Source: Macrostomum lignano (Eukaryota). From it: a DNA stretch of 64,000 bases. Location of the stretch: NCBI GenBank assembly GCA_002269645.1, contig NIVC01000891.1:1-64000 (forward strand), read 5' to 3'. The translations under genes and the position numbers were made by a program. Of the stretch, positions 769-57,607 are shown one piece after another. Below the pieces are notes generated by a model. The model ran no database searches. It saw nothing but the letters and a program-made list of their open reading frames with translations, and was not told the DNA's origin. Within the stretch, counting starts at the first letter, position 1. Each line of letters opens with the position of its first letter.

Positions 769-1011
769 ATGAGCTCGGAGTCAGAGTCAGACGGCGACAC
801 CGAAGGTGCTGAGCTCTGCGGCCAGTCGGAGTCGCTGACCCGCCGTCTGCGCAACATCCTCCGCGACTACTCGGACGGCCTGGCCATCCCCAAGGAGCTC
901 ATTCAGAATGCGGACGACGCCGGCGCCACCGAGGTGACGCTGATCTACGACAGCCGGGCCAATCTGCAGTGGCGCGAGACCGTCATGGGCCGGCGGATGG
1001 CCGACTGCCAG
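769..1011 (+). CDS. SACS-like: Sacsin-like gene copy 1, exon 1 (81 codons; start of first GHKL ATPase repeat)
   Basis: CGQSESLTRRLRNILRDYSDGLAIPKELIQNADDAGATEV matches the sacsin repeat motif GQxExLTxR..ELxQNADDA. Ends CAG|GTGGGT donor, phase 0. Confidence 0.9.
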
Positions 1012-1088
1012 GTGGGTGGCGGGCGGCTCTAATTGTGTTGGCTGATGCAGGGGAGTAGCCAGCATCTTTCATTGAGGGGGTCCTTTTT

Positions 1089-3256: not shown

Positions 3257-3526
3257 TGCAAATAGCACACGCAAACACTAAAAATGATGTTCTTCAAGTT
3301 TCTATTTCAATTAATCCAGATCATTTGAGTCCCGATTCACAAAAAATCACAACTCACTCAATCGCGATTCTCCAAATTCTACTCAACCAATCACTTTTGA
3401 TCTCGTGTCATCCCAAAAAGTTTGTTAAGTCCCAGCTCACCAAATGTGGGAAACATCTCAGGTAAAAAAAATTCCGACAAAGCTGACTGCTGGGTGTTCC
3501 GCCCCCTCGCCCTACCTGCCTCTCAG

Positions 3527-3755
3527 GGCCCCTGCCTCTGGGCACAACGACGCGCAGTTTACTGACGACGACTTCAAGAACCTGCTGAGCCTTGGCGGCG
3601 CCACCAAGGAGGCGCAGGCGGCGAAGGTGGGCAAATTCGGCCTCGGATTCAACGCCGTCTACAACCTGACGGACGTGCCGGCCGTCCTCAGCGGCTGCCA
3701 GCTGCAGCTGCTTGACCCGCACGGCGAGAAGCGTGGCCGTGGATTCCTGGAGGAG
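3527..3755 (+). CDS. SACS-like: Sacsin-like copy 1, exon 2 (GHKL G1/G2 boxes); 229 bp, i.e. a 2-bp deletion versus copies 2 and 4
   Basis: CTCTCAG| acceptor and GAGGAG|GTGAG donor. Encodes HNDAQFTDDDF...GKFGLGFNAVYNLTDVP. TGGGCAC here versus TGGGCGCAC in paralogs. Confidence 0.85.
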
Positions 3756-3924
3756 GTGAGAAGCTTTGGTGGGGGGGGATTCTGAGCAGCTCTGCCAGCG
3801 CCTTCCCAGTGGGCACTTGAAAGGTACCAAGGTGTCCTGTCCTGTTATGGCATTTTTACTGTATTTTCACCACCTGGCCTCAGTGTCACCCCGGCTTTTC
3901 AATGGAAGCTTTCACCCCAATGTG

Positions 3925-4055: not shown

Positions 4056-4238
4056 TTTCCCCATGTCCTTAGTTTCACTCCAATCCTGAACCTCTACCGT
4101 CCTTCAGGGCGTCCAAAGCGCAGCTTAATCTTCCGACCAGTTTTCGTTGGTTGATATACGCTCGTAGTTATTATTTTAATGGTCTCCCATTGTTAAATAA
4201 ATGAATGCTACATTTTCTATTGACCCTTACTTCGTCAG

Positions 4239-7200
4239 ATCTACCGCAAATACCGCAAGTGCGACACCGGCCTCAGGCTGAACTTCTCCAAGGAGGCCGG
4301 GCGCCGCATGCTGGCCAAGTATCCGCATCAGTTCGCGCCCTACACCGGCGTCATGGGCTGCGGCCCGGACCTCGGAGCCGAGCCCTACCCCGGCACGCTC
4401 ATCCGACTGCCGCTGCGGACTCAGGAGCAGGCCGGCGATCGCAGATCTGCCAACGGGCCTACAGCGAGCAGGAGATGCGCGACCTGCTTGACAAGACGGC
4501 TCAGCAAGCCCGCCACTTGCTGCTGTTCACCCAGTCCGTGTCCAGCTTCCGGCTGCTGCATCTGCGCGATGGCTCGACGGCTCGCTGCAGACCGACACGC
4601 TGCTCAAAGTGAGTCGCAGCCTGATTAAGTGCATTCGGCCGTTGCCGGGCACAAGCGAATCAGCGGATCTGCGCTCCCAGACGCGTGTACTGGCCGCTGC
4701 GGCCGAATATCTGGCGGGTGACAACGGCGGCGCTGGCGATGGAAGTTTCGCTGGGCAGCTGAAGCTGCACATCGACGTGCAGATAAACGAGACGGAAGCG
4801 AAGCGGGTTGGCATCGACACGAACGTCGCTATAACCGCCTCGGACAACTGGCTGGTGAGCGTAGCTCTGGGCTCGGGCGAGTCGCTGGAGATGTCGCGTC
4901 AACGCGAGGGACTCAGCCTCCCCGTCGCCAGTGTCGCCATTCGCCTGTCGGCTGGCGGCACCGCGATTGAGCCGGTGAATCGCGGCGTCGCCTTCTGCTT
5001 TCTGCCGCTGCCCATCGAGTCGCCGCTGCTGTTCCACGTAAACGCCGCCTTCGCAGTCACGTCCAGCCGACGCTACCTGGAGGAGGCCACCATGGACGAA
5101 GCCGAGGGCCGCTGGCACCCAGGTCGCTGGAACGCCGCCCTGCTGCGCGAAGCCGCCTGCGCCGCGCTGGTGTCTGCGCTCGAGCGACTCACTGCCGAAA
5201 ACATCACGGGCGCACCTTCGATCTGGCCGCTGCTAGAGGCCAACAACGGTGTCTGGCATCCTCTGATTGAGAGTTTCTACAGGACTGTCTTCATCGAAAC
5301 TGATCGCGCTCCAAGCATCTTTTACACCTCGGTGGGCTGGCGGCCGCTGGCTCAAGTTGTTTCTCTCGACGAATCGGCGCTGGGTGCCGCCGCATTGGGC
5401 TTTGAAGCTGCCAATGTTGTGCGCCGTCTGGCCCGGTCACTGATTCCGGCCGGCTCCGGCCTGGCTGAAGGCTTAGCGTCCAGCGTTCAAGCCGCTGCAG
5501 TGCGCCTCAACCTGCTTGGACACAGACTCTGGTCGGGTGAAGTCTTTGTTGCCAATTTTCTGGAACAACTTAACAGTCTGTGGGATTCGTCTGATGATGA
5601 GCGTCATTTGTGCTCCGAGTTTCTTAAATTTTTGCTTAAAAATCTGAGTAGGGAAGACATCGCACCACAGGACCCAACAGTTTGGCTCATGTCGGAGGGC
5701 ATCAGGAGCATGCTTAAATCTAGCCACTTCCTGCCTGACCAATCAAATCGGCTTTGCCGAGTAAGCGATCTGCTGGATCCGCACTGCGCTGCAGCTGCTC
5801 TGTATTTCCCAACTGACTCTGTATTTCCTAGAACAGACTTCAAAGAGGACTACAGTCTACGACCTGTCCTAATTTCTCTTGGGCTTCAGTCTCAAATTCC
5901 ATTTGACCATGTTCTTGAACGAGCTAATACCGTGTCAGCACTGAGCCAAGAAAATCGCCTGGAGGACGCTTTGAAGAGGGCGCGATCTCTGATGAAGTAT
6001 CTCGATCTAAACCGAACTGAATTTCAAGATCGCCTTCGTGAGCTGGCCAGCGTTGAATTTCTTCCAGCCAAGCGGAAGCCCGACGACTGCAGCCTGCACT
6101 GGCGCTCGGATGACTACCCCGTTACTCAGCTGTTCGCACCGGAAGTTCTATTCGAGTCTAAACAAGAGACATTGGGTTCTCTCTGTCAGTTAGTTCTGGA
6201 CAGCTGTGTACTTTCAGATACCAATCATTTAGCCCGAGAAGCATTGAATAAAAGCATTGGGGTACAAAAGGAAGTACCTCGCGTAATTGCTTGGGAACAG
6301 CTGCGTAGGGCGACGCAAACGTTTAGCATCGACAGTCGTCCTGTTTGCCTGGATGTGTATGAACATTTCTCTAAGCTTCTAATCAATAATCCTAAACTGG
6401 CCGATGAGATAAAGCTTGAATTCGAAGGTCTCAGCTCACCAGCAATAGTGTACTCGGATACTGGCTACTTAAAACCACACCAGGTGTCTCTGAGTTTTAA
6501 AGATCGAGAATGTCCACCCTACCTGTTTCGCCTGCCGTCTGACCTTCGAGTGGGCTATTTTAGTCATGAAAAGTATCTGCCGTTTCTTAAAGCGATTGGC
6601 GTTCTCGAAGAATTTGACTGCACCACCTACTGCAGAGTGCTTGAAGAAATACACGAGAACAAAAGTGGATCCGCTCTGACGGATAGTGAGAGAAAGAGTT
6701 GCATTGAGCTGCTAACGCGGCTGAGTGAGCTTAGCGAGCTGCCCGAGCCATCTGAAATTTTCGCTCCAGATCATGAAGGCTTCCTAGTCCGATGCTCGCA
6801 CCTTTGTTTTGGCAGCGTGAAGTGGCTCACCAAAGTCGATAAGCTGCGCTTCGCTCACAAAGACTTGGCGTACGGCGTTTGCGAGAAGTTGCGAATCCCT
6901 GATCAGAGAGTTCAAACTCTGAGAAAACATCACGTGCCGCTGCCGTTCGGCCAAAAAGAAGAGCTCACTACTCGACTCAAAGGAATTCTTCAAGGCTATC
7001 CTCTGGGCATCGAGATCTTCAAGGAGCTCGTTCAGAACGCGGATGACGCCGGTGCTACTAGGCTGCAATTCATCAACGATCGTCGCAATCTCGGAACAGA
7101 GAAGGTGCTGAGCGACGAGTGGAAGGCGCTACAGGGACCGGCGCTTGTAGTTGTCAATGACACGACGTTCAATGACGAAGACATCGAAGGAATTCAGAAG

Positions 7201-10200
7201 CTTGGTGTCGGCTCCAAAGGAAGCCAGCCCTGGAAAACGGGGCAGTACGGCATAGGGTTCAATTGTGTCTATCACGTGACGGATGTGCCGATGTTTCTCT
7301 CTGACAATCGGGTCCTGTGTGTGATGGACCCCCACTGCAGGCACATGCCGCATGCCAACACAGAAAGTCCAGGCGGAATGTACAAAGATGAAGGTCTTGA
7401 CGAAGTGAGGGACGATTTTCGTGACGTTTTTGATGGATTCAAAATCAGCAATGAGACCACGACCGGCTCCACTGTCTTTAGACTGCCTCTCAGAACTTTG
7501 GAAACGGCGCGCCTCTCTGAGATTTTCCCGGCTGCAAAACCTTTGAATTCTAATGATATCTACAAACTATTTAAAAAGTTTGCTGAAGATTTGGCGGAAA
7601 TCTTACTGTTTTTGAGCAGCGTCAAGACTATTCAACTCTCTGAACTGGGCACTGATGGCAAGCTGACCAAAGTCTTTGAAACAAGCTCGACTATATCGGA
7701 CCCATCGGCCTGCATTCGATTCAGAGGCGAGTGTCAGAAAATCGGCAGGCAGCTGGTTCAGAAAGATTTCGACCCGAAGCTCTTGCATTCGTGCACGCAG
7801 GAAGTGTATGAGGCTATGATCTCTACCCATAACACCTTTTTACAAGAACCTGACTCCACCAGCAGTAAGTGGATTGTAGCCCAGCAACTCGGGTTGCCAG
7901 CTGACTCAGCGAGCGTCATTCCCAGCAAAGACCAGAGCAAGCTTGGCTATGCTGTTTCCAATGGCGAGTGGAAGGCACTTCCGAAGGTAGGAGTGGCAGC
8001 GCGGCTTGATCAGAGCAAAAAGTTCCACCGAGAACACCGTGTGTTCAACCTGCTGCCGCTTCCCCTGACAACCGATCTGCCTGTTCACATCAACGGCCAC
8101 TTTGCCCTTGACCCGTCTCGCCGCAGTCTGTGGGAGGCTCATTCTAGCGATGCCTCTGCCGAATGGAACAATCTGCTAGTGAGCACTGCTCTTCCTGTGT
8201 GCTACGCAACTCTTCTGGAGGCGGCGACGCAGCGTCTACCTCTTGAAGATCCAATCGAAAGTGATGGTAATTCATCACCCTTTGAACATTATTACCGTTT
8301 GTTTCCAGAGGCAAAGGATGAGAAACCCGGCAAGTCCCACTGGAACACAATGGCGATTAAATTCTACCAAAATGTATTTAAAAACCAGCGCAGAATTTTT
8401 CCTGTCGTTGACCTGACTAATCAGAGCATGATTAGCTGGCTCCCTCTTGCTCAAAGCCCTCAGTCAGTAGATGGGGAGTCCGCCTTTCTGCAAGAGGATT
8501 TGTCTGAAGATGTGTCAGAAGTGCTGCAGCGTCTGGGCCTTCCTCTCATCGTCAGAGGGCGTCGCTTTACGGATTGCATGAAAAGCAGCCGGCTGAGCTA
8601 TGTTGCCAATGCGAATCCGGACAATATAATCAACTACTTGAAGGGAGTCCGCTGCTCGGCGTTGCGCGACTCTCTTCCAAGGCAGGTCGAGCTGACTCCA
8701 TTTGCCGGAGTACAGCGAGTCGAGACTTTGATGCACTACTTGCTCACAAATCTGTCGCTTGAGGATCGAGCCGACACTAAAGACTCTGAAAGTGACTCTG
8801 CTGAGATTCGGCGTATGGCCTCGCTAATCAGCACACCATTGAATCTGACCGCTGATGGAATGCTTCGAGTTTTCAGAACGGAGAATCTTTCATTTCTCAC
8901 AGAATACGTGCGACTGATACCAGCCAAATCTACCGACTTGCTTTCGCAGTTCTGCCACAAAAAGATTCAAGAGGTTTTTAAGCCTCCGCCAACATCGCTT
9001 CCCGTTGGATATTTTTCAAGGCCCAACCGCTGTCCCAGTGCTCACAAATCCGGGCTGTACCGCAAATTCAGCATTGCTGAGTTCCGCCGTTGTCTTGGCA
9101 ACTTCTTGTCTGCCTGCTGCTCTCCAAACGTACCGTGCATTCCGCTAGCTAGCATTGAGACTCAGCTGAGGGGCTTAAAATTTGCAGACTGGATTCGAGA
9201 CGTGTGGAAATTCTTAGCAGAAGAGTGCGAGATTGTACGCAAAACGTATGATAGCGTTGCTGCCGAATATTATAAAGTTAACCTCAGGCGTTATCCTCAG
9301 AAACCACCTGAAATCAAAGATGTTCTGGCTCCCGTGTCAGACGCAGCCCTAGTGCCAGCCAGCTTTGAGTGGGCATGGGAGAAACACATTTCATGCTGCA
9401 GTTGGCTGTTTAAAATATCGCATGTGTCTTCAGTGTACCACAAGTCTACACCAAAACCGTACGATTTGGAAGAGAAAATTGAAGAGGCTCTTTGTCAGCT
9501 AAAGGCTCCACTTTTAACAATCTATAACAGTAAATTGATCAAACTAGTAGGGAAATTGGAGGAGCCCTACTCAATGCTTGCTGTGCTACGCTACGCACTT
9601 AACGAAAATCCTCACCAACCGCGCCATTTGCCTTCTGCTGACATGGCGAACAGCTTCGCCTGCTTTGTTCAGCAACATCAAGGTGCAATGGAGCAGGTGA
9701 TTGGCCGCAGAGACTTGATTAGTGAGCTGCAGCGTCTACCGATTTTTGTAACTCTCAGTGGCGAGTGCGTTGCGCTTGAGAACTTAAGCCCCAGAATTCT
9801 ACCGGCCGACTTGGTGTCTGAGGAGATGCACCTGTGGAGACGAGCAGCCCAGTTCGTCTTCTTAAGAAAAAACTTTCAGCTGGAGAAATTGCATCGCCTA
9901 ATGAGATGCAACGAACTAAGCGAATTTGCAGCCAATGTTGACTTTATTTTACCGGTTTTCGACAATTTCTCAAACCATACAAAGCAGGCTCAGCTGCAGA
10001 AACTGAAGTCACTCGCTTGGGATTTTCAGAGCTTGCGCCGTCGCAATCCTAGTGAAAGTCGCTCGTTTGAAGACGCGCTGAAGAACGCCAGAATTGTTCC
10101 GTTTCAGCAGTCCTGGTGCAGAGCCAGCAACTTTTTCGACCATCGCGTCGACATTTTTCGAGAATTCTGTTCGTCAGAGGAGTTCCTACCATTCCAATTT

Positions 10201-12981
10201 CAGCAAGATGACATGCTCACACTGATGGAGCTGGCAGGTCTGGTAACTGAGTGCTCACCCGATATGGTGCTGTGGTTCGCTAACGATACCGCCAATCTGC
10301 CACTCGACTTGGCTCGAAACAAATCGGAGACTCTACTGAAGTTTGTAGCTAGCCAAAGCTTCGAGCAGCATCGCACAGAAGCATTCCTGTCTCAACTTGC
10401 CAGAATATCATTCATTGTACCGGATGTGAAGCCTGAGCTGCAACAGCTGTGCGACAAGGGCTATGTACAGTTTTCTTCACTTGAAAATTGTGTAATCCCG
10501 GAGAACGTGTACATCTGTTGGACAGTGCTTCCTGTGGCTCCTGCTTTCATCGAAGAACTTGGTTGCTTCAGAAAGTACCTGCAGGAGAAGCCCCAGATGG
10601 ACAAGTTTTTCTCGCATTTGAAGAACCTAATCGGATCCCGTCAGTTCTGCAACGCTGGTCTGGCGGACAGTATAAAGCAAGTCAGAGGCAAGGTGATGCA
10701 CAAAGTTTACTCATTCATGAGTTCACTGGATCAGGCAGCTTCGGAGCGCTACCTGAATGCGCTAAGAAATTCACCGTGCATTCTCGTCGACAACTATTCG
10801 AGATTTGCTCAGCCATGCCAAGTCACTCTGACCGAAAGGGATGAAATCCCACCGTTTCTCTTTGCCTGCCCTCCTGACTTCTTGCAGTACAGCGAGCTTT
10901 TTCTAAAACTCGGAGTAACACGGCAGCCGAGCATTGAGCAGGCTGCGATGGTGCTGCATCTAATCAAGAGCGCTGCCAAGGATGATTTTTTGCCAGTGGC
11001 CCTGTTGGAACCGACAGCAAAATGCATTCGCCTGTTGCTATCGCTTCTCCATCAGCAGGGGGCATTTCCAACCGGCATTCGCCTGTGCCTGCCAACATCA
11101 GTCAGTACGGAGGAGCAGACCAACAAGAGCTACAAGTTGGTCGAGGCTAGCCAGGTGGTGATCAATGACGCAGTGGCCTATTTCGAACGTTTGGGGGATG
11201 CAACGCTGTCCGGAATTCAGTTCCTGGATCTGGAATTTTGCGGAATCAGCGCAGATCAGCAGCGAACTCTCGAGCGCCGCCTGAGCAAAGATCTCCGGGT
11301 TCCAAGACTGTCCGAACTCGTCGAGGAACATCTGGTGTCCGATGAGTGTCCCGAGTGCTCCGCTGGCGAGGCTGGTTGCCAGGTGTGTGCTGAATTTTCG
11401 AAGAAGCTTAGCAGCTCAGATTTTCGCAGCGGACTCGCAAGCGTTATCGTTTCCGATTCTATGGACGCAAACATTGAGAGCACATTCAAATCGGTCAATG
11501 GAATATTTGAAGACTTTCGAATCGCTTGCAAGCAGAAATTGGTTACTGTGCTGTTAATGAATGGCACTGAGATCGACGCATCCAAGAGGCGAAGGAAGTT
11601 TTTGCTAAAAGACGGTGCGATCTACATGAACCATCTCGACCGCTTGCCTGAGGGCGATGATCGGAACTTTTGGCTCAAGGAACTGATGGGAGCTGTGCAC
11701 GGTCTATTGGAGCCAAGCTTCAGCCTCACCTCACAACAAACATCAAGGCTGCAGTTCATGATGATGCTTGAAGATTTCAGAAATATTCCCCAGATGCTGC
11801 AAGAGGAAAACATTCGCTTTTATGGCCAGAGCGATGACTTGAAGGACATGTGGCATGGAGTTGAGCTGGGAAGTCCGGTAAGTCCGATGGACGCATTGAA
11901 ACTCGAGCCGTTGGGCTTGACGCACCTGCAGCCAGACGACGTGGTAGCGTTTGCGGATCCCGAGGCCGGAGGGTCGCTGATCTACGCCCGAATCGTCGAG
12001 TCACATGGCTCAGTCGATCCCAAAAGCGATGAAGGCGAGTCTGACAGCGGCGAGTGGAGCCTCGAGTTCACCATAGACTGCGGTCGTCAGCGCGGCCGAA
12101 AAGTGCGGGCGTCGGCGGCACTGCTGCAAGCTTTTGGAAAGATCGAGAATGAATTGGAGTTGCATGAGAACAATAGCGGCTGGGAACTCAGGATGGAGCA
12201 GCAGATTCACAAAGCGGCTCGCTTATCCGATAATTTCGAACGGAAAGCCGCCACACAACGGATTCTCGACGCCTGCGATTCAAACCGCTTCGACGAGGAG
12301 CAGCAGCCGGATCCCGAAGCGATTCGGCGGGTGCAGAGTCTCGCTCAAGAGCAGCTGAGGGGCAGTCTGTCTAACGATGATTGGGAGATGATGAGCGGAA
12401 ATGCTGCCAGGGCTGCTCGACGCTATCGATCGGCGCGAGCTGAAAGTCGCATGAATGGCGACTTCGGCTTCGGTGGCGGCGGCGGCGGCGACGGTGGCGG
12501 TTTGGGTGCCGCCTTTTGCGGGGCCTTTAACAGCGCCAGGACGGGTGGCGGAGGTGGCGGCGGTTTTGGCGGACCTGGGTGCATTCCTCCGTCGCCAGGT
12601 GAGGCGCAGCGCTATCTACAGACGGCCCAAGGTGACGCGGAGGCGGCCGTGGCCGCTGAACGAGCCTGCTGGGCCTGCTACCAGAGCTGGCAGGCCGCTG
12701 AGAAAGCGATGAAGGCCGTCGTGCTTGCCGAGAATCGACCGGCTGAGCGGAGTCACAACCTTATGAGCCACCTGCTTCTCGTTGTCGATGAGCAGCTGCG
12801 GGACCAGCTGGAGCCGCTGGTGCACGACCTGCTGGCTGTACTTCACCGGGACCCGCGCTATCCGCGTGATGGCGACACGCCTTACGACGTGTTCCGCGCC
12901 GAGCACGCGCGACAGGCCAGCGGGGCAGCGGCCGGCATTGTGCGACTGGTGGAGGCGGCCGTCAGCGATGCCACTGATTGA
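4239..12981 (+). CDS. SACS-like: Sacsin-like copy 1, giant exon 3 (end of ATPase repeat 1, ATPase repeat 2, J-like domain, HEPN); two 1-bp deletions at ~4438 and ~4576
   Basis: TTCGTCAG|ATCTAC acceptor. 2790-aa ORF with PFGQKEELTTRL..ELVQNADDA, GQYGIGFNCVY, LPVHINGHFALDPSRR and C-terminal QAAEKAMKA..HNL..RYP. Confidence 0.9.
12601..12960 (+). other. HEPN domain of copy 1 (also 38357-38740 in copy 2 and ~49208-49500 in copy 3)
   Basis: EAQRYLQTAQGDAEAA..ACWACYQSWQAAEKAMKA..RPAERSHNL..RYP..P..F..E.A..A matches the HEPN pattern at the C-terminus of sacsins. Confidence 0.8.
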
Positions 12982-13649
12982 AGACCTGGCGCTGACTGCA
13001 GCTGATTGGGTTTGTTTGTTTTCATTGATGCCAGGACACCAAGAGTAAGCTGAGCATGAGTTGAGTTTCCTTTATGCAGAGGCGGGCAAACTGGAGCTGT
13101 TGAATTTAGCAGAAGATTCGAGGCGATTACACTTTCAATCTAAGAAATAGCTGATGAATTTAGACCAGATGATAAAGTTTACCAGATACGAGCGACTAGA
13201 ACTCTGGACCGACAAACCCATGAGAAACGTTTGCCTGCCTCAGCCGTTGAAGCGTAGGTGCAGTCAGCTTCCAGTAATCAAGTAATCAATAATTCTACGT
13301 CGTGTTTTTATTCTGTTGGGACAATGAGGCATTGTCTATTCAATTGTCTATTTAAAATAATGTCTGTTTTAATCAAGCCTTTAACTTAATTTAAGGTTTT
13401 ATTGTTCCTAGTTTGTATTGGTTTGATGTCTAGTTTATTAAATTAACGCCTAATTAATCCAGTCAAATTTAAATAGACTGGTAGACCTAGAAATTGCATG
13501 CTCTTAATTATCTGCAAGGTTGGGAGAAAATTGGGCCAAAGCCAATTGCCTAACATCTTATAGAACGATTCCAAAATAAGCCACGTGTCAGTGATGTTCA
13601 CCCAAATGATGTTCATCAAATTCAAAGTGTCTTTTGGAAGAAAAGGATC

Positions 13650-13900
13650 CCCTCTCCTCCCCTCCATCATTTCTCCTATCCCCGAGCCTCTTCTGTCTTC
13701 TCTTTTATCTCTCCCCTCTCCTCCGTCCCCTCTTTCCCCTTTTTTCTCTCTCTTCCACTCTCTCCCCTCTACTCTCTCCACGTTCTCCCCTCTCTCCGCT
13801 CTCCTCTCCGCTTATCTTCTATCTTTTCTCTTATCTCACCCCATCTATCTTCTCTCATTTCTCATCTTCCATTCCCTCTCATTTCCACTCTTATCAGACC
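13650..13900. repeat. CT-rich low-complexity tract in the 3' flank (also 39420-39670 and 49915-50170)
   Basis: Polypyrimidine sequence present downstream of copies 1-3. Confidence 0.8.
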
Positions 13901-14751
13901 CGGAGTCATAAATTGGATTCTTTTTCTGCCCTTGAGGTAAAAATTTTTTCCGAGCCCAGTTCGATCTAAAGACTCCGGGAACGCCATCGCACGACCTACC
14001 GGTATCACTATCACCCCCTCTGCACTAATATTGTCATGGACAGCTTCTCTTAAAAAACTGAATTTTTTCTCTATTTGTCGATTTTATTACCAAGCTAAAG
14101 TGTTATCACTTATCAACATGGTAGAAGTGCCAAGTTCCCATATTTGATAAATATTATTACATTTTCTTAGTTTTTGCCAGAATAGGACCAACCCCACCAC
14201 ACGAAACTCAAGGACATTGTTGAACATATTTGTTGCAAACCTTCTGAAACAAGATTTAAGTCACCACACCTTCAGGTTCAGACCAGACCAGAAAATCGAT
14301 TCAAAATAAGAGAGTTGCTATAATAGAATAAGCTTGGTACTTCTACTGTTAATTTGCTCGTCCTAATTACTAAATATTATTTTTATCATTTGTCACTGTT
14401 TTTGTTTTCTCATTGTTTTTGCTGATGTCTTGCATACTTAATCTGTTTAGTTACTCTAGAATACTATAGCAGTATAATTAACTTTCTTTCTTTACTTAGA
14501 CTTACGCTCGTAGGCAGACTTCTTTAATATTTTACTTAAAATCTACATAAGGACCCTATCGAACCTTAAAAATTTATTCAGTTATATTTTTACTCTCCTA
14601 ATTCTGTATGTGTTTGCGTCGTTTTAAAATTCTGCTCCGTCTATTTTATTCAAAATACACCTTTTGACGTGAATTAAGTCAAATTTTGTTTTGCCTTTGT
14701 CCTTACTATTAATAAATCTCGTTTGAATGTGTCTTAAGATTTAGGAATTTA

Positions 14752-30010: not shown

Positions 30011-33000
30011 ATCTACCGCAAATACCGCAAGTGCGACACCGGCCTCAGGCTGAACTTCTCCAAGGAGGCCGGGCGCCGCATGCTGGCCAAGTATCCGCAT
30101 CAGTTCGCGCCCTACACCGGCGTCATGGGCTGCGGCCCGGACCTCGGAGCCGAGCCCTACCCCGGCACGCTCATCCGACTGCCGCTGCGGACTCAGGAGC
30201 AGGCCGGCGAGTCGCAGATCTGCCAACGGGCCTACAGCGAGCAGGAGATGCGCGACCTGCTTGACAAGACGGCTCAGCAAGCCCGCCACTTGCTGCTGTT
30301 CACCCAGTCCGTGTCCAGCTTTCGGCTGCTGCATCTGCGCGATGGCTTGGACGGCTCGCTGCAGACCGACACGCTGCTCAAAGTGAGTCGCAGCCTGATT
30401 AAGTGCATTCGGCCGTTGCCGGGCACAAGCGGATCTGCGGATCTGCGCTCCCAGACGCGTGTACTGGCCGCTGCGGCCGAATATCTGACGAGTGACAACG
30501 GCGGCGCTGTCGATGGAAGTTTCGCTGGGCAGCTGAAGCTGCACATCGACGTGCAGGTGAACGAGACGGAAGCGAAGCGGGTTGGCATCGACACGAACGT
30601 CGCTATAACCGCCTCGGACAACTGGCTGCTGAGCGTAGCTCTGGGCTCGGGCGGGTCGCTGGAGATGTCGCGTCAACGCAAGGGACTCAGCCTCCCCGTC
30701 GCCAGTGTCGCCATTCGCCTGTCGGCTGGCGGCACCGCGATTGAGCCGGTGAATCGCGGCGTCGCCTTCTGCTTTCTGCCGCTGCCCATCGAATCGCCGC
30801 TGCTGTTCCACGTAAACGCCGCCTTCGCAGTCACGTCCAGCCGGCGCTACCTGGAGGAGGCCACCATGGACGAAGCCGAGGGCCGCTGGCACCCAGGTCG
30901 CTGGAACGCCGCCCTGCTGCGCGAAGCCGCCTGCACCGCGCTGGTGTCTGCGCTCGAGCGACTCACTGCCGAAAACATCACGGGCGCGCCTTCGATCTGG
31001 CCGCTGCTAGAGGCCAACAACGGTGTCTGGCATCCTCTGATTGAGAGTTTCTACAGGACTGTCTTCACCGAAAGTGATCGCGCTCCAAGCATCTTTTACA
31101 CCTCGGTTGGCTGGCGGCCTCTGGCTCGAGTTGTTTTTCTAGACGAATCGGCGCTGGGTGCCGCCGCATTGGGCTTTGAAGCCGCCAATATTGTGCGCCG
31201 TCTGTCCCGATCACTGGTTCCGGCCGGCTCCGGCCTGGCTGAAGGCTTAGCGTCCAGCGTTCAAGCCGCTGCAGTGCGCCTCAATCTGCTTGGACACAGA
31301 CTCTGGTCGGGTGAAGTCTTTGTTGCCAATTTTCTGGAGCAACTTAATCGTCTGTGGGATTCGTCTGATGAAGAGCACCATTTGTGCTCCGAGTTTCTCA
31401 AATTTTTGCTTAAAAATCTAAGCAGGAAAAATGTAGCACCACAGGACCCAACAGTTTGGCTCATGTCGGAGGGCAACAGGAGCATGCTTAAATCTAGCAG
31501 CTTCCTGCCTGACCAATCAAATCGGCTTTGCCGAGTAAGCGATCTGCTGGATCCGGACTGCGCTGCAGCCGATTTGTACTTTCCAACTGACTCTGTATTT
31601 CCTAGAACAGACTTCAAAGATGACTACAGTCTTCGACCTGTCCTAATTTCTCTTGGACTTCAGTCTGAAATTCCATTTGACCATGTTCTTGAACGAGCTA
31701 ATACCGTGTCAGCACTGAGCCGAGGAAATCGCCTGGATGACGCTTTGAAGAGGGCGCGATCTCTGATGAAGTATCTCGATCTGAACCGGACTGAATTTCA
31801 AGATCGCCTTCGTGAGCTGGCCAGCGTTGAATTTCTTCCAGCCAAGCGGAAGCCCGACGACTGCAGCCTTCACTGGCGCTCGGATGACTACCCCGTTACT
31901 CAGCTGTTCGCACCGGAAGTTCTATTCCACTCTAAGCATAAGACATTGGGTTCTCTCTGTCAGTTGGTTCTGGACAGCTGTGTACTTTCAGATACCAATT
32001 ATTCAGCCCGAGAAGCATTGAATAAAAGCATTGGGGTACAAAATGAAGTGCCGCGCGAAATGGCATGGGAACAGCTGCGTCTGGCAACGCAAACATTTAA
32101 TATCGATAGTCGTCCTGTTTGCCTGGCTGTGTATGAACATTTCTCTAAGCTTCTAATCAAAAATCCTGAACTGGCCAATGAGATAAAGCTTGAATTCGAA
32201 GGTCTCGGCTCACCAGCAATAGTGTACTCGGATACTGGCTACTTAAAACCACACCAGGTGTCTTGGAGTTTGAAAGATCGAGAATGTCCGCCCTACCTGT
32301 ATCGGCTGCCGTCTGACCTTAGAGCGGGCTATTTTAGTCATGAAAAGTATCTGCCGTTTCTTAAAGCGATTGGCGTTCTCGAAGAATTTGACTGCACCAC
32401 CTACTGCAGAGTGCTTGAAGAAATACACGAGAACAAAAGTGGATCCGCTCTGACGGATAGTGAGAGAAAGAGTTGCATTGAGCTGCTAACGCGGCTGAGT
32501 GAGCTTAGCGAGCTGCCCGAGCCATCTGAAATTTTCGCTCCAGATCATGAAGGCTTCCTAGTCCGATGCTCGCACCTTTGTTTTGGCAGCGTGAAGTGGC
32601 TCACCAAAGTCGATAAGCTGCGCTTCGCTCACAAAGACTTGGCGTACGGCGTTTGCGAGAAGTTGCGAATCCCTGATCAGAGAGTTCAAACTCTGAGAAA
32701 ACATCACGTGCCGCTGCCGTTCGGCCAAAAAGAAGAGCTCACTACTCGACTCAAAGGAATTCTTCAAGGCTATCCTCTGGGCATCGAGATCTTCAAGGAG
32801 CTCGTTCAGAACGCGGATGACGCCGGTGCTACTAGGCTGCACTTCATCAACGATCGTCGCAATCTCGGAACAGAGAAGGTGCTGAGCGACGAGTGGAAGA
32901 CGCTACAGGGACCGGCTCTCGTAGTTGTCAATGACACGACGTTCAATGACGAAGACATCGAAGGAATTCAGAAGCTTGGTGTCGGATCCAAAGGAAGCCA

Positions 33001-36000
33001 GCCCTGGAAAACGGGGCAGTACGGCATAGGGTTCAATTGTGTCTATCACGTAACGGATGTACCGATGTTTCTCTCTGACAATCGGGTCCTGTGCGTGATG
33101 GACCCCCACTGCAGGCACATGCCGCATGCCAACACAGAAAGTCCAGGCGGAATGTACAAAGATGAAGGACTTGACGAAGTGAGGGACGATTTTCGTGACG
33201 TTTTTGATGGATTCAAAATCAGCAATGAGACCACGACCGGCTCCACTGTCTTTAGACTGCCTCTCAGAACTTTGGAAACGGCGCGCCTGTCTGAGATTTT
33301 CCCGGCTGCAAAACCTTTGAATTCTGATGACATCTACAAACTATTTAAAGAGTTTGCTGAAGATTTGGCGGAAATCTTACTGTTTTTGAGCAGCGTCAAG
33401 ACTATTCAACTCTCTGAACTGGGCACTGATGGCAAGCTGACCAAAGTTTTTGAAACAAGCTCGACTATATCGGACCCATCGGCCTGCATTCGATTCAGAG
33501 GCGAGTGTCAGAAAATCGGCAGGCAGCTGGTTCAGAAAGATGTTGACCCGAAGCTCTTGCATTCGTGCACGCAGGAAGTGTATGAGGCTACGATCTCTAC
33601 CCATAACAGCTTTTTACAAGAACCTGACTCCACCAGCAGTAAGTGGATTGTAGCCCAGCAACTCGGGTTGCCAGCTGACTCAGCGAGCGTCATTCCCAGC
33701 AAAGACCAGAGCAAGCTTGGCTATGCTGTTTCCAATGGCGAGTGGAAGGCACTTCCGAAGGTAGGAGTGGCAGCGCGACTTGATCAGAGCAAAAAGTCAC
33801 AGCAAAAACACCGCGTGTTCAACCTGCTGCCGCTTCCCCTGACAACCGATCTGCCTGTTCACATCAACGGCCACTTTGCCCTTGACCCGTCTCGCCGCAG
33901 TCTGTGGGAGGCTCATTCTAGCGATGCCTCTGCCGAATGGAACAATCTGCTAGTGAGCACTGCTCTTCCTGTGTGCTACGCAACTCTTCTAGAGGCGGCG
34001 ACGCAGTTTCTGCCACTGGAAGAACAAGTCAAAAGTGATGAGAATTCAACTGGCTTTGAACATTATTACCGTTTGTTTCCAGAGGCAAAGGATGAGAAAC
34101 CCGGAAAGTCCCATTGGAACACAATGGCGATTGAATTCTACCAAAATGTATTTAAAAACCAGCGCAGAATTTTTCCAGTCGTTGACCTGACTAATCAGAG
34201 CCGCATGATTCGCTGGCTCCCTCTTGCTCAAAGCCCTCAGTCAGTAGATGGGAAGTCCGCCTTTCTGCAAGAGAATTTGCCTGAAGATGTGTCGGAAGTG
34301 CTGCAGCGTCTGGGCCTTCCTCTCATCGTCAGAGGGCGTCGCTTTACTGACTGCATGAGAAGCAGCCGGCTGAGCTATGTTCCCAACGTAAATCCAGACA
34401 ATATAATCAACTACTTGAAGGGAGTCCGCTGCTCGGCGTTTCGCTACTCTCTTCCAAGGCAGGTCGAGCTGACTCCATTTGCCGGAGTACCGAGAGTCGA
34501 GACTGTGATGCACTACTTGCTCACAAATCTGTCTCCTGAGGAGCAAACCGACACTAAAGACTCTGAAAGGGACTCTGCTGAGATTCGGCGTATGGCCTCG
34601 CTAATCAGCACACCATTGAATCTGACCGCTGATGGAATGCTTCGAATTTTCAAGGCGGAGAATCCTTCATTTCTCACAGAATACGTGCGTCTGATACCAG
34701 CCGAATCTATCGACTTGCTTTCGCAGTTCTGCCACAAAAAGATTCAAGAGGTTTTTAAGCCTCCGCCAACACCGCTTTTCGTTGGATATTTTTCAAGGCC
34801 CAACCGCTGTCCCAGTGCTCACAAATCCGGCCTGTACCGCAAATTCAGCATTGCTGAGTTCCGCCGTTGTCTTGGCGGCTTCTTGCCTGCCTGCTGCTCT
34901 CCAAACGTCCCGTGCATTCCGCTAGCTAGCATTGAGACTCAGCTGAGGGGCTTAAAATTTGTAGACTGGATTCAAGATGTCTGGAAATTTCTCTCAGAGG
35001 AGTATGATAGCGCTGCTGAAGAACATTTCAGAGCCAACCGCAGAAGTTATTCGCAGAAGAGACCAGAAATCAAATATGTCCTGGCTCCCGTGTCCGATAC
35101 AGCCCTAGTGCCAGTCAGCTTCAAGTGGAAGAAACAAATTTCATGCTGCAATTGCCTATTCAGAGTATCCCATGCGGCTTCAGTGTACAACAAGTCTAGA
35201 CGTAGACCGCAAGATTTGGAAAAGAAAATCGAAGAGGCTCTTTGTCAGCTTAAGGCTCCAGTTTTAACAATCTATGACAGTAAATTGATCAAACTAGTAG
35301 GGAGATTGGAGGAACCCAACTCGATGCTTGCTATTATCCAATACGCACTTAACGAAAATCCTCACAAACCGCGCCATTTGCCTTCTGCTGACATGGCGAA
35401 CAGCTTTGCCTGCTTTGTTCAGCAACATCAAGGTGCAATGGAGCAGGTGATTGGCCGCAGAGACTTGATCAGTAAGCTGCGGTTGCTACCGATTTTTGTA
35501 ACTCTCAGTGGCAAGTGCGTTGCGCTGAAGAATTCAAGCCCCGCAATTCTACCGGCCGACTTGGTGTCTAAGGAGATGCACCTGTGGAGCCGAGCAGCCC
35601 AGTTCGTCTTCTTAAGACAAAAATTTGTCCTGGAGAAATTGCATAGCCTAATGGAATGCAGGGAACTAAGCGAGTTTGCAGCTTATGCTGAATTTATCCT
35701 ACCGGTTTTCGACTATTTTTCAAACCATACAAGGCAAGCTCACCTGCAGAAACTAAAGTCACTCGCTTGGGATTTTCAGGGATTGAGTTATGGTAATCCT
35801 TGTGAAAGTCGCTGGTTTGAAGACTCGCTGAAAAACGCCAGAGTTGTTCCGTTTCAGCAGTCCTGGTGCAGAGCCAGCAACTTTTTCGACCATCGCGTCG
35901 ACATTTTTCGAGAATTCTGTTCGTCAGAGGAGTTCCTACCATTCCAATTTCAGCAAGATGACATGCTCACACTGATGGAGCTGGCAGGACTGGTAACTGA

Positions 36001-44424: not shown

Positions 44425-47400
44425 ATGAGCTCGGAGTCAGAGTCAGACGGCGACACCGAAGGAGCTGAGCTCTGCGGCCAGTCGGAGTCGCTGACTCGCC
44501 GGCTGCGCAACATCCTCCGCGACTACTCGGACGGCCTGGCCATCCCCAAGGAGCTCATTCAGAATGCGGACGACGCCGGCGCCACCGAGGTAACGCTGAT
44601 CTACGACAGCCGAGCCAATCTGCAGTGGCGCGAGACCGTCATGGGCCGGCGGATGGCCGGCTGCCAGGTGGGTGACGGGCGGCTCTAATTGTGTTGGCTG
44701 ATGCAGGGGATTAGCCAGCAGCTTTCATTGAGTGGGTGGGGTCGCGCCGTTTTATCTGACTGATTGCCATTTTTAACTGGGCGCCGTTTAACTCGACAGG
44801 ACAGGACAGCGCCATCCTATATCCTTGATTAACAGTAGGAATACCAAGCCATTTTTCTAATTATTATTTAGAACATTGAGCTTTGAACATTATTACCGTT
44901 TGTTTCCAGAGGCAAAGGATGAGAAACCCGGCAAGTCCCACTGGAACACAATGGCGATTGAATTCTACAAAGAAGTGTTTAAAAACCGGCGCAGAATTTT
45001 TCCTGTCGTTGATCTGGCTAATCAGAGCAGGATTACCTGGCTCCCTCTTGCTGAAAGCCCTTAGTCAGTAGATGGGGAGTCCGCCTTTCTACAAGAGAGT
45101 CTGCCAGAGGTTGTGTCGGTAGTGCTGCAACGTCTGGGCCTGCCTCTTATCGTCAGAGGGCGTCGCTTTACGGATTGCATGAAAAGCAGCCGGCTGAGCT
45201 ATGTCCCCAACGTGAATCCAGACAATATAATCAACTACTTGAAGGGAGTCCGCTGCTCGGCGTTGCGAGACTCTCTTCCAAGGCAGGTCGAGCTGACTCA
45301 ATTTGCCGGAGTACCGAGAGTCGAGACTGTGATGCACTACTTGCTCACCAATCTGTCACTTAAGGATCAAACCGACACTAAAGACTCTAAAAGTGGTTCT
45401 GCTGAGATTCAGCGTATGGCCTCGCTAATCAGCACACCATTAAATCTGACCGCTGATGGAATGCTTCGAATTTTCAAGGCGGAGAATCCTTCATTTCTCA
45501 CAGAATACGTGCGTCTGATACCAGCCAAATCTACCGACTTGCTTTCGCAGTTCTGCCACAAAAAGATTCAAGAGGTTTTTAGGCCTCCGCAAACATCGCT
45601 TCTCGTTGGATATTTTTCAAGCCCCAACCGCTGTCCCAGTGCTCACAAATCCGGGCTGTACCGCAAATTCAGCATTGCTGAGTTCCGCCGTTGTCTTGGC
45701 AACTTCTTGCCTGCCTGCGGCTCTCCAAACGTCCCGTGCATTCCGCTAGCTAGAATTGAGACTCAGTTGAGGGGCTTGAAATTTGCAGACTGGATTCGAG
45801 ACGTCTAGAAATTTCTCTCAGAGGAGTACGAGATTGTACGCGCAACGTATGGTAGTGCTGCTGCGGAATATTATAAAGTTAACCGCAGGCGTTATCCTCA
45901 GAAACCACCTGAAATCAAAGATGTTCTGTCTCCTGTGTCCGACGCAGCCCTTGTGCCAGCCAGCTTTGAGTGGGAGAAACGCATTTTGAGCTGCGATTTC
46001 TTGTTTAAAGTATCGCATGCAGCTTCAGTGTACCACAAGTCTACACGTAGACCGCAAGATTTGGAAAAGGAAATCGAAGAGGCTCTTTGTCAGCTAAAGG
46101 CTCCAGTTTTAACAGTCAATGACAGTAAATTGATCAAACTAGTAGGGAAATTGGAGGAGCCAAACTCAATGCTTGCTGTGCTCCGCTACGCACTTAACGA
46201 AAATCCTCACAAACCGCGCCATTTGCCTTCTGCTGACATGGCGAACAGCTTTGCCTGCTTTGTTCAGCAACATCAAGGTGCAATGGAACAGGTGATTGAC
46301 CGCAGAGACTTGATCAGTGAGCTGCAGCGTCTACCGATTTTTGTAACTCTTTAGTGGCATGTGTGTCGCGCTTGAGATTGAAAGCCCAAGAATTCTACCA
46401 GCCTACTTGGTGTCTGAGGAGATGCACCTGTGGAGCTTAGCAGCCCAGTTCGTCTTCCTAAGAAAAAACTTTGACCTGGAGAAATTGCATCGCCTAATGG
46501 GATGCGAGGAGGTGAGCAAATTTGCAGCTTATGCTGAATTTATCCTACTCGCGTTCGACAATTTCTCAGACCATACAAAACAAGCTCACCTTTGGAAACT
46601 TGAGTTTCTGGCTTTTGATTTTCAAAGCTTGCGCCGTCGCAATCCTAGTGAAAGTCGCTCGTTTGAGGACTCGCTGAAAAACGCCAGAATTGTTCCGTTT
46701 CAGCAGTCCTGGTGCAGAGCCAGCAACTTTTTCGACCATCGCGTGAATATTTTTAGAGAATTCTGTCCCTCAGAGAGGTTCCTTCTACGCCAATTTCAGC
46801 AAGATGACATGCTCACACTGATGGAGCTGGCAGGTCTGGTAACTGAGTGCATACCGGCTATGGTGCTGCGGTTCGCTAACGATAGTGCCAATCTGCCACT
46901 CGACTTGGCTCGAAACAAATCGGAGACTCTACTGAAGTTTGTAGCTAGCCAAAGCTTCGAGCAGCATCGCACAGAAGCATTCCTGTCTCAACTTGCCAGA
47001 ATATCATTCATTGTACCGGATGTGAAGCCTGAGCTGCAACAGCTGTGCGACAAGGGCTATGTACAGTTTTCTTCACTTGAAAATTGTGTAATCCCGGAGA
47101 ACGTGTACATCTGTTGGACAGTTCTTCCTGTGGCTCCTGCTTTCATCGAAGAACTTGGTTGCTTTAGAAAGTACCTGCAGGAGAAGCCCCAGATGGACAA
47201 GTTTTTCTCGCATTTGAAGAACCTAATCGGATCCCGTCAGTTCTGCAACGCTGGTCTGGCGGACAGTATAAAGCAAGTCAGAGGCAAGGTGATGCACAAA
47301 GTTTACTCATTCATGAGTTCACTGGATCAGGCAGCTTCGGAGCGCTACCTGAATGCGCTAAGAAATTCACCGTGCATTCTCGTCGACAACTGTTCGAGAT

Positions 47401-56509: not shown

Positions 56510-57607
<1,098 letters not shown>

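What the first reader, a model, noticed from the sequence alone, without database searches (positions are those of the whole stretch)
12736..12756. HEPN domain retains an R-x5-H motif, so it may be an active RNase
Seen: R-P-A-E-R-S-H at 12736-12756, 38510-38530 and 49361-49381, invariant in three copies and preceded by EKAMKA. Known: Rx4-6H is the catalytic signature of RNase-active HEPN dimers, and vertebrate sacsin HEPN is generally regarded as lacking it. Caveat: HNL/HDL is common in this HEPN subfamily and the Arg may not be positioned catalytically.
Basis: partly seen in the sequence, partly recalled or inferred. Interest (0 to 1): 0.7.

Follow-up and report, generated by a model that had tools for sequence, protein, structure and literature searches.

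The report
Flatworm sacsin-like HEPN keeps ancestral histidine
The R-P-A-E-R-S-H peptide is real and lies in the C-terminal HEPN domain of tandemly duplicated sacsin-like genes of the flatworm Macrostomum; only its histidine is a conserved family feature, the arginine is not, and the idea that some animal sacsin HEPN domains may still cut RNA was already published in 2013.

Summary
Observation confirmed: RPAERSH is at all three coordinates, in frame, preceded by EKAMKA. It lies in a Pfam PF05168 HEPN domain that ends large sacsin-like ORFs.

- **Source:** the window is Macrostomum lignano. It is 97% identical over 10.8 kb to a contig of assembly GCA_002269645.1.
- **Three-copy invariance means little:** the copies are recent tandem duplicates, about 91% identical in protein. 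Copy 3 is broken, and R.{4,6}H occurs 16 times in one ORF.
- **Position:** in a confident model (pLDDT 94.9) the peptide is the loop just after helix 2.
- **His:** His58 is nearly invariant (150 of 153 family members). It survives in diverged M. lignano paralogues and in gastropod and cnidarian sacsin-likes, and is lost in human sacsin.
- **Arg:** Arg52 is Q or K in those paralogues. None of 14 other eukaryote-like relatives has R at -5 to -7. It is followed by Pro, not a polar residue.
- **Signature:** the flatworm domain keeps D18, Q37, E40, K41, K44, H58 and R92-Y-P. Human sacsin has replaced six of these.

The domain is ancestral-type and a fair RNase candidate, but not through a demonstrable canonical Rx5H dyad. 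I found no assayed PF05168 HEPN. Anantharaman et al. (2013) already made the general prediction. Verdict: new member of a known kind, low to moderate interest.

The parts
12736..12756 (+). RPAERSH, copy A (domain residues R52-H58; residue 1 = window 12583). This is the loop between helix 2 and the short helix 3 of the HEPN domain.
   Evidence: Translation. AF2 model with helices 28-49 and 60-65. His58 is H in 150 of 153 family members; R at -6 occurs in 6 of 150.
38510..38530 (+). RPAERSH, copy B.
49361..49381 (+). RPAERSH, copy C, in a broken gene copy.
   Evidence: A 1-bp insertion near 49506 removes the last HEPN helix.
12583..12981 (+). HEPN domain of copy A (132 aa plus stop), PF05168 type.
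   Evidence: Pfam E = 4e-8. AF2 pLDDT 94.9. Foldseek best match is human sacsin HEPN 3o10, TM 0.80. The family profile hits 1ufb, 1o3u, 1wol and 3o10.
12700..12717 (+). EKAMKA in helix 2. E40, K41 and K44 form the Ex3K acidic/basic motif of HEPN domains.
   Evidence: E is present in 151, K41 in 152 and K44 in 151 of 153 family members. Human sacsin has K, L and I at these positions. The Ex3[KR] motif is described.
12853..12873 (+). P-R-Y-P-R-D-G. R92-Y93-P94 lie in the loop after helix 4 (core helix 3), which is topologically the canonical HEPN motif position.
   Evidence: R is present in 147 of 153 members, and Y and P are nearly invariant. The loop spans residues 87-99 in the model. The canonical motif location is given.
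38345..38755 (+). HEPN domain of copy B. It has a 6-aa insertion in the helix 1-2 loop relative to copy A.
4609..12981 (+). Main ORF of sacsin-like copy A (2790 aa): SACS (Hsp90-like) domain plus C-terminal HEPN. The 5' part is disrupted by two 1-bp gaps near 4439 and 4574 relative to copy B.
30080..38755 (+). Main ORF of sacsin-like copy B (2891 aa), the most intact copy: two SACS stretches plus HEPN.
44881..49719 (+). Copy C, 5'-truncated and frameshifted (ORFs 46359-48230 and 48227-49618). Probably a pseudogene, or it carries assembly indels.
769..1029 (+). Putative first coding exon of copy A (start of the first SACS domain).
   Evidence: Pfam SACS model positions 2-64, E = 8.5e-17. Similar segments lie at 22220-22727, 44231-44737 and 60885-61437.
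3444..3785 (+). Putative second coding exon of copy A (SACS model positions 71-132).
   Evidence: The counterpart upstream of copy B lies at 29215-29505.
62766..64000 (+). Start of a fourth sacsin-like copy, which runs off the window.
   Evidence: 94.6% identical to 3916-5130.

Best explanation
[quoted passage not shown] The domain ends each member of a tandem array of sacsin-like genes in Macrostomum lignano.

**Shown**
- The domain is a real HEPN whose closest solved structure is the human sacsin HEPN.
- It keeps every near-invariant residue of the prokaryotic family: D18, Q37, E40, K41, K44, H58 and R92-Y93-P94. Human sacsin has replaced six of these.
- His58 is kept in M. lignano paralogues that are only 31-46% identical in this domain.
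- Arg52 is not kept in those paralogues.

**Inferred**
- Like human sacsin HEPN and AbiV, the domain forms a symmetric dimer.
- The two His58 loops (with R56 and R52) and the two R92-Y-P loops line a positively charged pocket that binds phosphate groups of RNA or nucleotides.
- Because the full ancestral signature is intact, the pocket most likely retains the ancestral HEPN-T chemistry. That chemistry is predicted to be metal-independent RNA cleavage, with His58 as the general base and a conserved basic residue (R92, possibly helped by R56) holding the phosphate.

On this reading the match to 'Rx5H' is largely fortuitous. The informative features are His58 together with E40, K41, K44 and R92. 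I put the chance that the isolated domain cleaves RNA at about 0.35-0.4.
For: - **Family and fold.** Pfam HEPN above threshold. The family profile hits TT1696 (3e-31), TM0613, ST0689 and human sacsin HEPN (6e-19). The AF2 model has pLDDT 94.9. Foldseek ranks 3o10 first with TM 0.80, then 1ufb, 1wol, 1o3u, 4nqf and 2hsb.
- **Signature residues.** Counts over 153 members: H58 150, E40 151, K41 152, K44 151, R92 147. Human sacsin has D18N, Q37L, E40K, K41L, K44I and H58V.
- **Conservation across animals.** His58, E-K-x-x-K and R-Y-P are kept in M. lignano paralogues P0003 and P0009/P0155, in the gastropods Batillaria and Babylonia, and in the cnidarian Clytia.
- **Selection.** dN/dS between copies A and B is 0.44 overall and 0.23 in the HEPN domain.
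- **Literature.** An alternative active site built from an insert His plus the basic residue of the canonical position is proposed for AF0298-like HEPN-T and AbiV. AbiV's R91-x5-H97 lies in the flexible segment after the E67/K70 helix, R91A abolishes rRNA cleavage, and the AbiV dimer was superposed on the sacsin HEPN structure 3O10. The human sacsin HEPN dimer has a positively charged pocket at the dimer surface that binds phosphates and RNA.
Against: - I found no report of a PF05168-type HEPN assayed for RNase activity. Yao et al. 2020 state that no RX4H RNase motif is found in this class and that no biochemistry exists.
- I could not obtain model coordinates or model a dimer, so the proximity of H58, R56, R52 and R92 is taken from the literature and not measured here.
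- In 66 of 150 family members an Arg lies at -5 from His58 (a true Rx4H in this loop).
- dN/dS of 0.44, frameshifts in copies A and C, and a LINE insertion suggest relaxed constraint on at least part of the array.
- A profile-profile comparison with HepT/DUF86 gave no usable alignment, so the mapping onto the canonical motif rests on helix topology alone.
Confidence: 0.45

Rival explanations
1. The domain is a non-catalytic dimerisation and RNA/nucleotide-binding module, as in human sacsin. His58 and the E-K-x-x-K residues are structural or ligand-binding, and no RNA is cut.
For: The only experimentally characterised sacsin HEPN (human) binds nucleotides through their phosphates and binds RNA, with no nuclease activity reported. 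The PF05168 class has no demonstrated RNase activity, and Yao et al. find no RX4H motif in it. In AbiV the equivalent E67 and K70 are described as dimer-interface residues. Arg52 is not conserved.
Against: The flatworm domain keeps exactly the residues that human sacsin lost, including a His that is 98% conserved in the family. Such conservation of a solvent-exposed loop His is more typical of catalysis than of packing. AbiV, a structural neighbour, is an RNase.
Confidence: 0.35
2. One reading: R52-x5-H58 is a bona fide canonical HEPN Rx4-6H dyad, with Arg52 and His58 of two protomers forming the composite RNase site.
For: The spacing falls within Rx4-6H. 82 of 150 PF05168 members have an Arg at -5 to -7 of this His, mostly at -5. 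AbiV uses an R-x5-H in the topologically equivalent loop, and R91A kills activity. Anantharaman et al. say several animal sacsins keep 'the conserved motif'.
Against: Arg52 is Q or K in diverged M. lignano paralogues, and none of 14 other eukaryote-like relatives has R at -5 to -7. The residue after R is Pro, not the usual N, D or H. The loop follows core helix 2, not core helix 3. The chance of an R at -5 to -7 of any given His is about 0.2.
Confidence: 0.1
3. The array is decaying. These copies are pseudogenes or weakly constrained recent duplicates, and the motif persists only because too little time has passed.
For: Copy C is 5'-truncated, has a frame break at 48227-48230, and has a 1-bp insertion inside the HEPN domain. 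Copy A has two 1-bp gaps in its first SACS domain. A LINE and satellites lie between the copies. dN/dS is 0.44. In the public M. lignano assembly only a 90-aa gene is annotated at the homologous locus.
Against: Copy B has an uninterrupted 2891-codon ORF and copy A a 2790-codon ORF, which is very unlikely without selection at about 50% GC. dN/dS is below 1, and 0.23 in the HEPN domain. Single-base indels may be long-read assembly errors. The same residues are kept in much older paralogues.
Confidence: 0.1

Closest known systems
Human sacsin HEPN domain (PDB 3O10)
   Same: Same position at the C-terminus of a giant protein with Hsp90-like SACS repeats. It is the best structural match (TM 0.80) and a profile match at E = 6e-19. 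The R-Y-P motif is shared. The human domain dimerises and has a phosphate-binding pocket.
   Different: Human sacsin has D18N, Q37L, E40K, K41L, K44I and H58V, whereas the flatworm domain keeps all six ancestral residues. No DnaJ domain is detected upstream in the flatworm protein. A Gly-rich linker precedes the flatworm HEPN.
Prokaryotic stand-alone PF05168 HEPN proteins (TT1696/1ufb, TM0613/1o3u, ST0689/1wol; 'class II' HEPN of HEPN/MNT pairs)
   Same: Same Pfam family and the same signature: W-L..A..DL, QQAAEKALKA, a loop His followed by [SND]-[VLI], and RYP. At the sequence level these are the closest relatives apart from other sacsin-likes.
   Different: The prokaryotic proteins are about 130 aa, stand alone and often pair with MNT nucleotidyltransferases. 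A plurality have R at -5 (Rx4H), whereas the flatworm has R at -6 and -2. Their biochemical activity is untested.
AbiV (Lactococcus abortive-infection HEPN RNase)
   Same: AbiV's reported structural neighbours are AF0298, TT1696 and the sacsin HEPN. Its R91-x5-H97 lies in the segment after the helix carrying the conserved E and K, which is the same topological place as RPAERSH. R91A abolishes rRNA cleavage.
   Different: I obtained no significant sequence match; the only hint is a Pfam HEPN_AbiV hit at E = 0.22 to one bacterial relative. The AbiV loop is long, Lys-rich and disordered. The AbiV authors note that neither R nor H is strictly conserved in their family. The work is a preprint.
HepT/DUF86 (PF01934) type VII toxin HEPN RNases with RX4HXY
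   Same: Same superfamily (Pfam clan), a four-helix core and dimeric RNases.
   Different: The canonical motif lies on core helix 3 with a polar residue after R and a Tyr at +2 from H. No profile-profile alignment to the flatworm family was obtained. Foldseek gives TM of only 0.42 (7bxo_F).

Membership tests
HEPN domain, Pfam PF05168 (HEPN-T clade) | Significant match to the family profile above the curated threshold. | tested here: met
   33.8 bits against a cut-off of 22, E = 4e-8. A profile of 29 members hits 1ufb, 1o3u, 1wol and 3o10 at 3e-31 to 6e-19.
HEPN domain, Pfam PF05168 (HEPN-T clade) | Up-down helical bundle fold of solved HEPN-T structures. | tested here: met
   AF2 pLDDT 94.9 with helices 7-24, 28-49, 60-65, 70-86 and 106-131. 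Foldseek top hits are all HEPN-T structures.
HEPN domain, Pfam PF05168 (HEPN-T clade) | Family signature residues: E-K-x-x-K in helix 2, the loop His, and R-Y-P. | tested here: met
   All are present, and each is conserved in at least 147 of 153 members.
Sacsin / sacsin-like proteins | One or more SACS (Hsp90-like ATPase) repeat regions followed by a C-terminal HEPN. | tested here: met
   PF25794 SACS at E = 3e-72 and 5e-89, plus a C-terminal HEPN. Upstream exons carry the start of a further SACS domain.
Sacsin / sacsin-like proteins | DnaJ (J) domain just before the HEPN, and an N-terminal ubiquitin-like domain, as in vertebrate sacsin. | tested here: not met
   No DnaJ hit at E <= 1 in the 258 aa before the HEPN. 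No UBL appears among the Pfam hits. This makes the protein a sacsin-like paralogue and not an orthologue of vertebrate sacsin.
Catalytically active HEPN RNases (canonical R-polar-xxx-H / Rx4-6H) | An Arg and a His spaced by 4-6 residues. | tested here: met
   R52-x5-H58, and also R56-x6-H63. The pattern is common by chance: 16 matches in ORF A.
Catalytically active HEPN RNases (canonical R-polar-xxx-H / Rx4-6H) | Both R and H conserved among homologues. | tested here: not met
   His meets this (150 of 153). Arg52 does not: it is Q or K in M. lignano paralogues, none of 14 other eukaryote-like relatives has R at -5 to -7, and R at -6 occurs in 6 of 150 members.
Catalytically active HEPN RNases (canonical R-polar-xxx-H / Rx4-6H) | Polar residue (N, D or H) immediately after the Arg. 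| tested here: not met
   Pro53 follows Arg52.
Catalytically active HEPN RNases (canonical R-polar-xxx-H / Rx4-6H) | Motif at the end of core helix 3 and the start of the loop to helix 4. | tested here: not met
   The peptide is the loop after core helix 2 (model residues 50-59). R92-Y-P occupies the position after core helix 3. The mapping rests on helix order only, because the profile comparison with HepT failed.
Catalytically active HEPN RNases (canonical R-polar-xxx-H / Rx4-6H) | R and H of two protomers juxtaposed at the dimer interface. | not testable with these tools
The arrangement is inferred only from the AbiV and sacsin literature.
Catalytically active HEPN RNases (canonical R-polar-xxx-H / Rx4-6H) | Metal-independent RNA cleavage that is lost in R and H mutants. 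| not testable with these tools
   This is an experiment. I found no such data for any PF05168 member.

The most novel reading that the evidence does not exclude
The flatworm sacsin-like array encodes active, chaperone-tethered RNases. These would use the 'alternative' HEPN-T site (loop His58 plus R92/R56) instead of the canonical helix-3 dyad. If so, this would be the first biochemical proof that the large, unassayed PF05168 ('class II') HEPN clade is catalytic. It would also mean that vertebrate sacsin is a nuclease-dead descendant of an RNA-cutting stress or defence protein. The tandem, fast-turnover array would then resemble an innate-immunity gene family.
Probability: 0.25. Interest if true: 0.55.

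Novelty: new member of a known kind. Interest (0 to 1): 0.27.

Why it matters
[quoted passage not shown] An invertebrate sacsin-like HEPN that keeps all ancestral signature residues is a convenient natural 'wild-type' comparator. It would allow two questions to be tested. Was the ancestral sacsin HEPN an RNase that vertebrates inactivated? Is the abundant but unassayed PF05168 HEPN class catalytic at all? Both ideas are already in the literature (Anantharaman et al. 2013), so this locus adds an example and a cleaner residue-level hypothesis, not a new concept.

Tried and rejected
1. **Single-sequence AF2 model**. It gave three long helices at pLDDT 75. I discarded it in favour of the alignment-based model.
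2. **Word-indexed homologue search with the domain alone**. It found one protein only, so the exhaustive representative search and a profile search were needed.
3. **Profile-profile alignment of the HEPN-T family against HepT/DUF86.** The aim was to map RPAERSH onto the canonical RX4HXY residue by residue.
   - hhalign against a consensus sequence and against 120 DUF86 proteins gave probabilities of about 0.2%. No mapping was obtained.
   - The DUF86 set lacked diversity, so this used the last homologue search for little return.
4. **Scans for a link to defence or named bacterial families.** PADLOC and NCBIfam scans of the domain and bacterial relatives found nothing relevant.
5. **My first reading that R-Y-P is simply 'the' Rx4-6H site and His58 is irrelevant.** I softened this after seeing that 66 of 150 family members carry a true Rx4H in the His58 loop, and that AbiV's tested motif lies in the equivalent loop.
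6. **Papers not held.** Kozlov 2011 (sacsin HEPN structure) and Aravind & Koonin 1999 could not be read.
7. **Exact-match look-up of ORF B.** It is not on record. The organism was established through P0001 and its contig.
Full report
**1. The observation**

Translating the three stated intervals in frame gives R-P-A-E-R-S-H each time. E-K-A-M-K-A lies six residues upstream in each copy. A six-frame scan finds the heptapeptide only at 12736-12756, 38510-38530 and 49361-49381.

The peptides lie near the ends of three ORFs: 4609-12981 (2790 aa), 30080-38755 (2891 aa) and 48227-49618 (463 aa). [quoted passage not shown] The domain alone scores 33.8 bits against a cut-off of 22.

**2. Where the sequence comes from and what the locus is**

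- **Organism.** The only close database protein is a 90-aa 'hypothetical protein' of the flatworm Macrostomum lignano (P0001, 89% identical). Its contig (GCA_002269645.1, NIVC01003100.1) matches window 3951-14751 at 97.1% over 10.8 kb, with collinear flanks. The window is thus M. lignano, or a homeologue, allele or other line of it.
- **Array structure.** A self-comparison shows a tandem array. Unit A (3916-14317) and unit B (29682-40083) are 94.4% identical. Unit C (44881-49719) is 92.5% identical to unit A and truncated at its 5' end. A fourth copy starts at 62766 and runs off the window.
- **Upstream exons.** Short ORFs at 769-1029 and 3444-3785 encode the first 130 positions of another SACS domain and are probably exons.
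- **Between the copies.** There is a LINE-type ORF with endonuclease and reverse transcriptase domains (18846-21962), a SAP-domain ORF, and several satellites.
- **Damage.** Copy A has two 1-bp gaps near 4439 and 4574 relative to B. Copy C has a frame break at 48227-48230 and a 1-bp insertion near 49506 that removes the last HEPN helix. These may be real decay or long-read assembly errors.
- **Selection.** Between A and B, dN/dS is 0.44 overall and 0.23 in the HEPN domain, the latter resting on only 7 synonymous and 5 non-synonymous changes.

**3. Is the pattern more than chance?**

Taken alone, no.

- The C-terminal proteins are about 91% identical pairwise, so by my rough estimate seven unchanged residues in three copies would occur about 40% of the time.
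- R.{4,6}H occurs 16 times in ORF A, against about 12 in shuffles.
- Given a His, an Arg at -5 to -7 is expected with probability about 0.2.

'Invariant in three copies' therefore adds nothing. Any significance has to come from the wider family.

**4. The wider family**

An exhaustive HMMER search with the 132-aa domain found 35 proteins at E <= 1e-3. These include:
- two diverged M. lignano paralogues, P0003 (46% identical) and P0009/P0155 (31-33% in my alignments);
- sacsin-like proteins of the gastropods Batillaria and Babylonia and the cnidarian Clytia (4305 aa, J domain);
- many stand-alone prokaryotic HEPN proteins of about 130 aa.

A profile search added 120 more, including Acropora and Ruditapes proteins. 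I aligned 153 members to one profile and counted residues. Domain numbering sets residue 1 at window 12583.

| Position | Members with the residue |
|---|---|
| E40 | 151 of 153 |
| K41 | 152 of 153 |
| K44 | 151 of 153 |
| H58 | 150 of 153 |
| R92 | 147 of 153 |
| Y93, P94 | nearly invariant |

Among the 150 members that have the His, Arg positions before it are:

| Offset from His58 | Members with R |
|---|---|
| -5 | 66 |
| -6 | 6 |
| -7 | 11 |
| -2 | 28 |

In the eukaryotic sacsin-like subset, 15 of 17 sequences keep the His. None of the 14 outside the window's own lineage has an Arg at -5 to -7; I counted this by eye from the rows printed. The two older M. lignano paralogues read Q-P-I-E-R-S-H and K-P-A-V-K-S-H. 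The His is under long-term constraint. The Arg that creates the 'Rx5H' is not.

**5. Structure**

With the 29-sequence alignment, AlphaFold2 gives a confident model (pLDDT 94.9). Its helices are 7-24, 28-49, 60-65, 70-86, 100-103 and 106-131. RPAERSH (residues 52-58) is the loop immediately after helix 2, which carries E40, K41 and K44. R92-Y-P lies in the long loop after helix 70-86.

Foldseek ranks the human sacsin HEPN first (3o10, TM 0.80). TT1696, ST0689, TM0613, 4nqf and AF0298 follow.

The family profile aligned to 3o10 shows that human sacsin has replaced D18 (N), Q37 (L), E40 (K), K41 (L), K44 (I) and H58 (V) while keeping R-Y-P. The flatworm domain is the ancestral, prokaryote-like state. 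The human domain is the derived one.

**6. How this relates to the canonical HEPN active site**

Anantharaman et al. 2013 make four relevant points:
- The Rx4-6H motif lies at the end of core helix 3 and the start of the loop to helix 4.
- A polar residue usually follows the Arg.
- A conserved acidic residue (Ex3[KR]) lies in helix 2.
- In AF0298-like HEPN-T proteins and AbiV the canonical His is usually missing. A second, strongly conserved His from the insert between helices 2 and 3 could form an alternative active site with the basic residue of the canonical position.

By helix order in my model, E40-x3-K44 is the helix-2 motif, His58 is that insert His, and R92 occupies the canonical position.

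Yao et al. 2020 independently report that PF05168 ('class II') HEPNs lack an RX4H RNase motif and had never been studied biochemically. My literature searches found no later assay.

Three points run the other way:
- 44% of my family sample carry a true Rx4H in the His58 loop.
- A 2024 preprint reports that AbiV's 91-RNHKSKH-97 lies in the flexible segment after the helix with the conserved E67 and K70. Its structural neighbours are AF0298, TT1696 and the sacsin HEPN. R91A abolishes rRNA cleavage, and the two motifs are juxtaposed in a dimer that the authors superposed on the sacsin HEPN structure 3O10.
- The human sacsin HEPN dimer has a positively charged pocket at the dimer surface that binds nucleotide phosphates and, in a 2025 preprint, RNA.

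I tried to map the loop onto HepT's RX4HXY by profile-profile alignment, but this failed. The mapping therefore rests on topology and the literature.

**7. Most likely mechanism**

- **Shown:** the domain is an intact ancestral-type HEPN-T domain, with a conserved His58, a conserved E-K-x-x-K and R-Y-P, and a non-conserved Arg52.
- **Inferred:** the domain forms a symmetric dimer whose His58 loops and R92 loops line a basic pocket for RNA or nucleotide phosphates. If catalytic, the chemistry would be metal-independent cleavage with His58 as general base and R92 and/or R56 as the phosphate clamp. R52 would be at most auxiliary.

I rate RNase activity at about 0.35-0.4. The main rival, at about the same weight, is a non-catalytic binder like human sacsin.

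**8. Comparison with the known, and novelty**

- **Membership.** PF05168 and the sacsin-like architecture are met. Orthology to vertebrate sacsin is not: no J domain or UBL was detected.
- **Canonical RNase motif.** Spacing is met. Conservation of the Arg, the polar residue after it, and the helix-3 location are not met. Geometry and activity are untestable here.

The finding is therefore a new member of a known kind, with a sharper residue-level hypothesis. Interest is low to moderate.

**9. What would decide it**

- A dimer model or structure with measured His58 to Arg distances.
- A structure-based alignment to HepT.
- Expression and RNA-cleavage assays in laboratory E. coli or yeast, comparing wild type with H58A, R52A/Q, R56A, R92A and E40A.
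- Read-level and transcript checks of gene integrity.

Noticed in passing
window 18846-21962 (+): A 1038-aa ORF with an Exo_endo_phos endonuclease domain and an RVT_1 reverse transcriptase domain. It looks like a non-LTR (LINE-type) retrotransposon inserted between sacsin-like copies A and B, in a region of 57-67% GC.
   Followed up: partly
window 28457-28939 (-): A 160-aa ORF with an N-terminal SAP domain (E = 1e-11) lies just upstream of copy B on the opposite strand. Whether it is a gene or part of a mobile element is unknown.
   Followed up: partly
window 23418-24485; 56509-57606; 2666-3256; 16756-17298; 1086-1606: Large simple repeats and satellites: AAGGAAT x152, (AG)n x551, a 46-bp unit x12.8, an 18-bp unit x30 and a 20-bp unit x26. 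The 7-bp array creates spurious ORFs of more than 400 aa on the minus strand (23144-24668).
   Followed up: partly
window 11809-12582 (+), and 12460-12580: There is no DnaJ match in the 258 aa before the HEPN, although cnidarian and gastropod sacsin-like relatives carry a J-domain HPD motif there (for example WHPDKH in Clytia). Instead a Gly-rich low-complexity linker (GFGGGGGGDGGG...GGGGGGGFGG) precedes the HEPN.
   Followed up: partly
window 4439, 4574, 48227-48230, 49506: Single-base indels relative to sister copies break the frame in copy A (first SACS domain) and in copy C (including inside the HEPN). They may reflect pseudogenisation or long-read assembly errors.
   Followed up: partly
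L001 (M. lignano GCA_002269645.1 NIVC01003100.1:35436-55708), versus window 3951-14751: The public assembly holds a 97.1% identical copy of unit A. Only a 90-aa gene (the HEPN C-terminus, P0001) is annotated there, so the giant sacsin-like gene appears to be missed or fragmented in that annotation.
   Followed up: partly
window 44100-44881: In copy C, an exon-1-like segment (44231-44737) is followed almost directly by sequence matching position 8280 of unit A. This implies an internal deletion of about 7 kb, or a chimeric duplication junction.
   Followed up: no
relatives P0007, P0021, P0038, P0039 (metagenome or unnamed eukaryote-like sacsin HEPNs): Some relatives carry a His 4-6 residues after the R-Y-P position (for example R-Y-P-T-S-H in P0007). 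P0007 is also one of the few with Asp in place of His58. This suggests the catalytic-type His may have moved between the two loops in different lineages.
   Followed up: no
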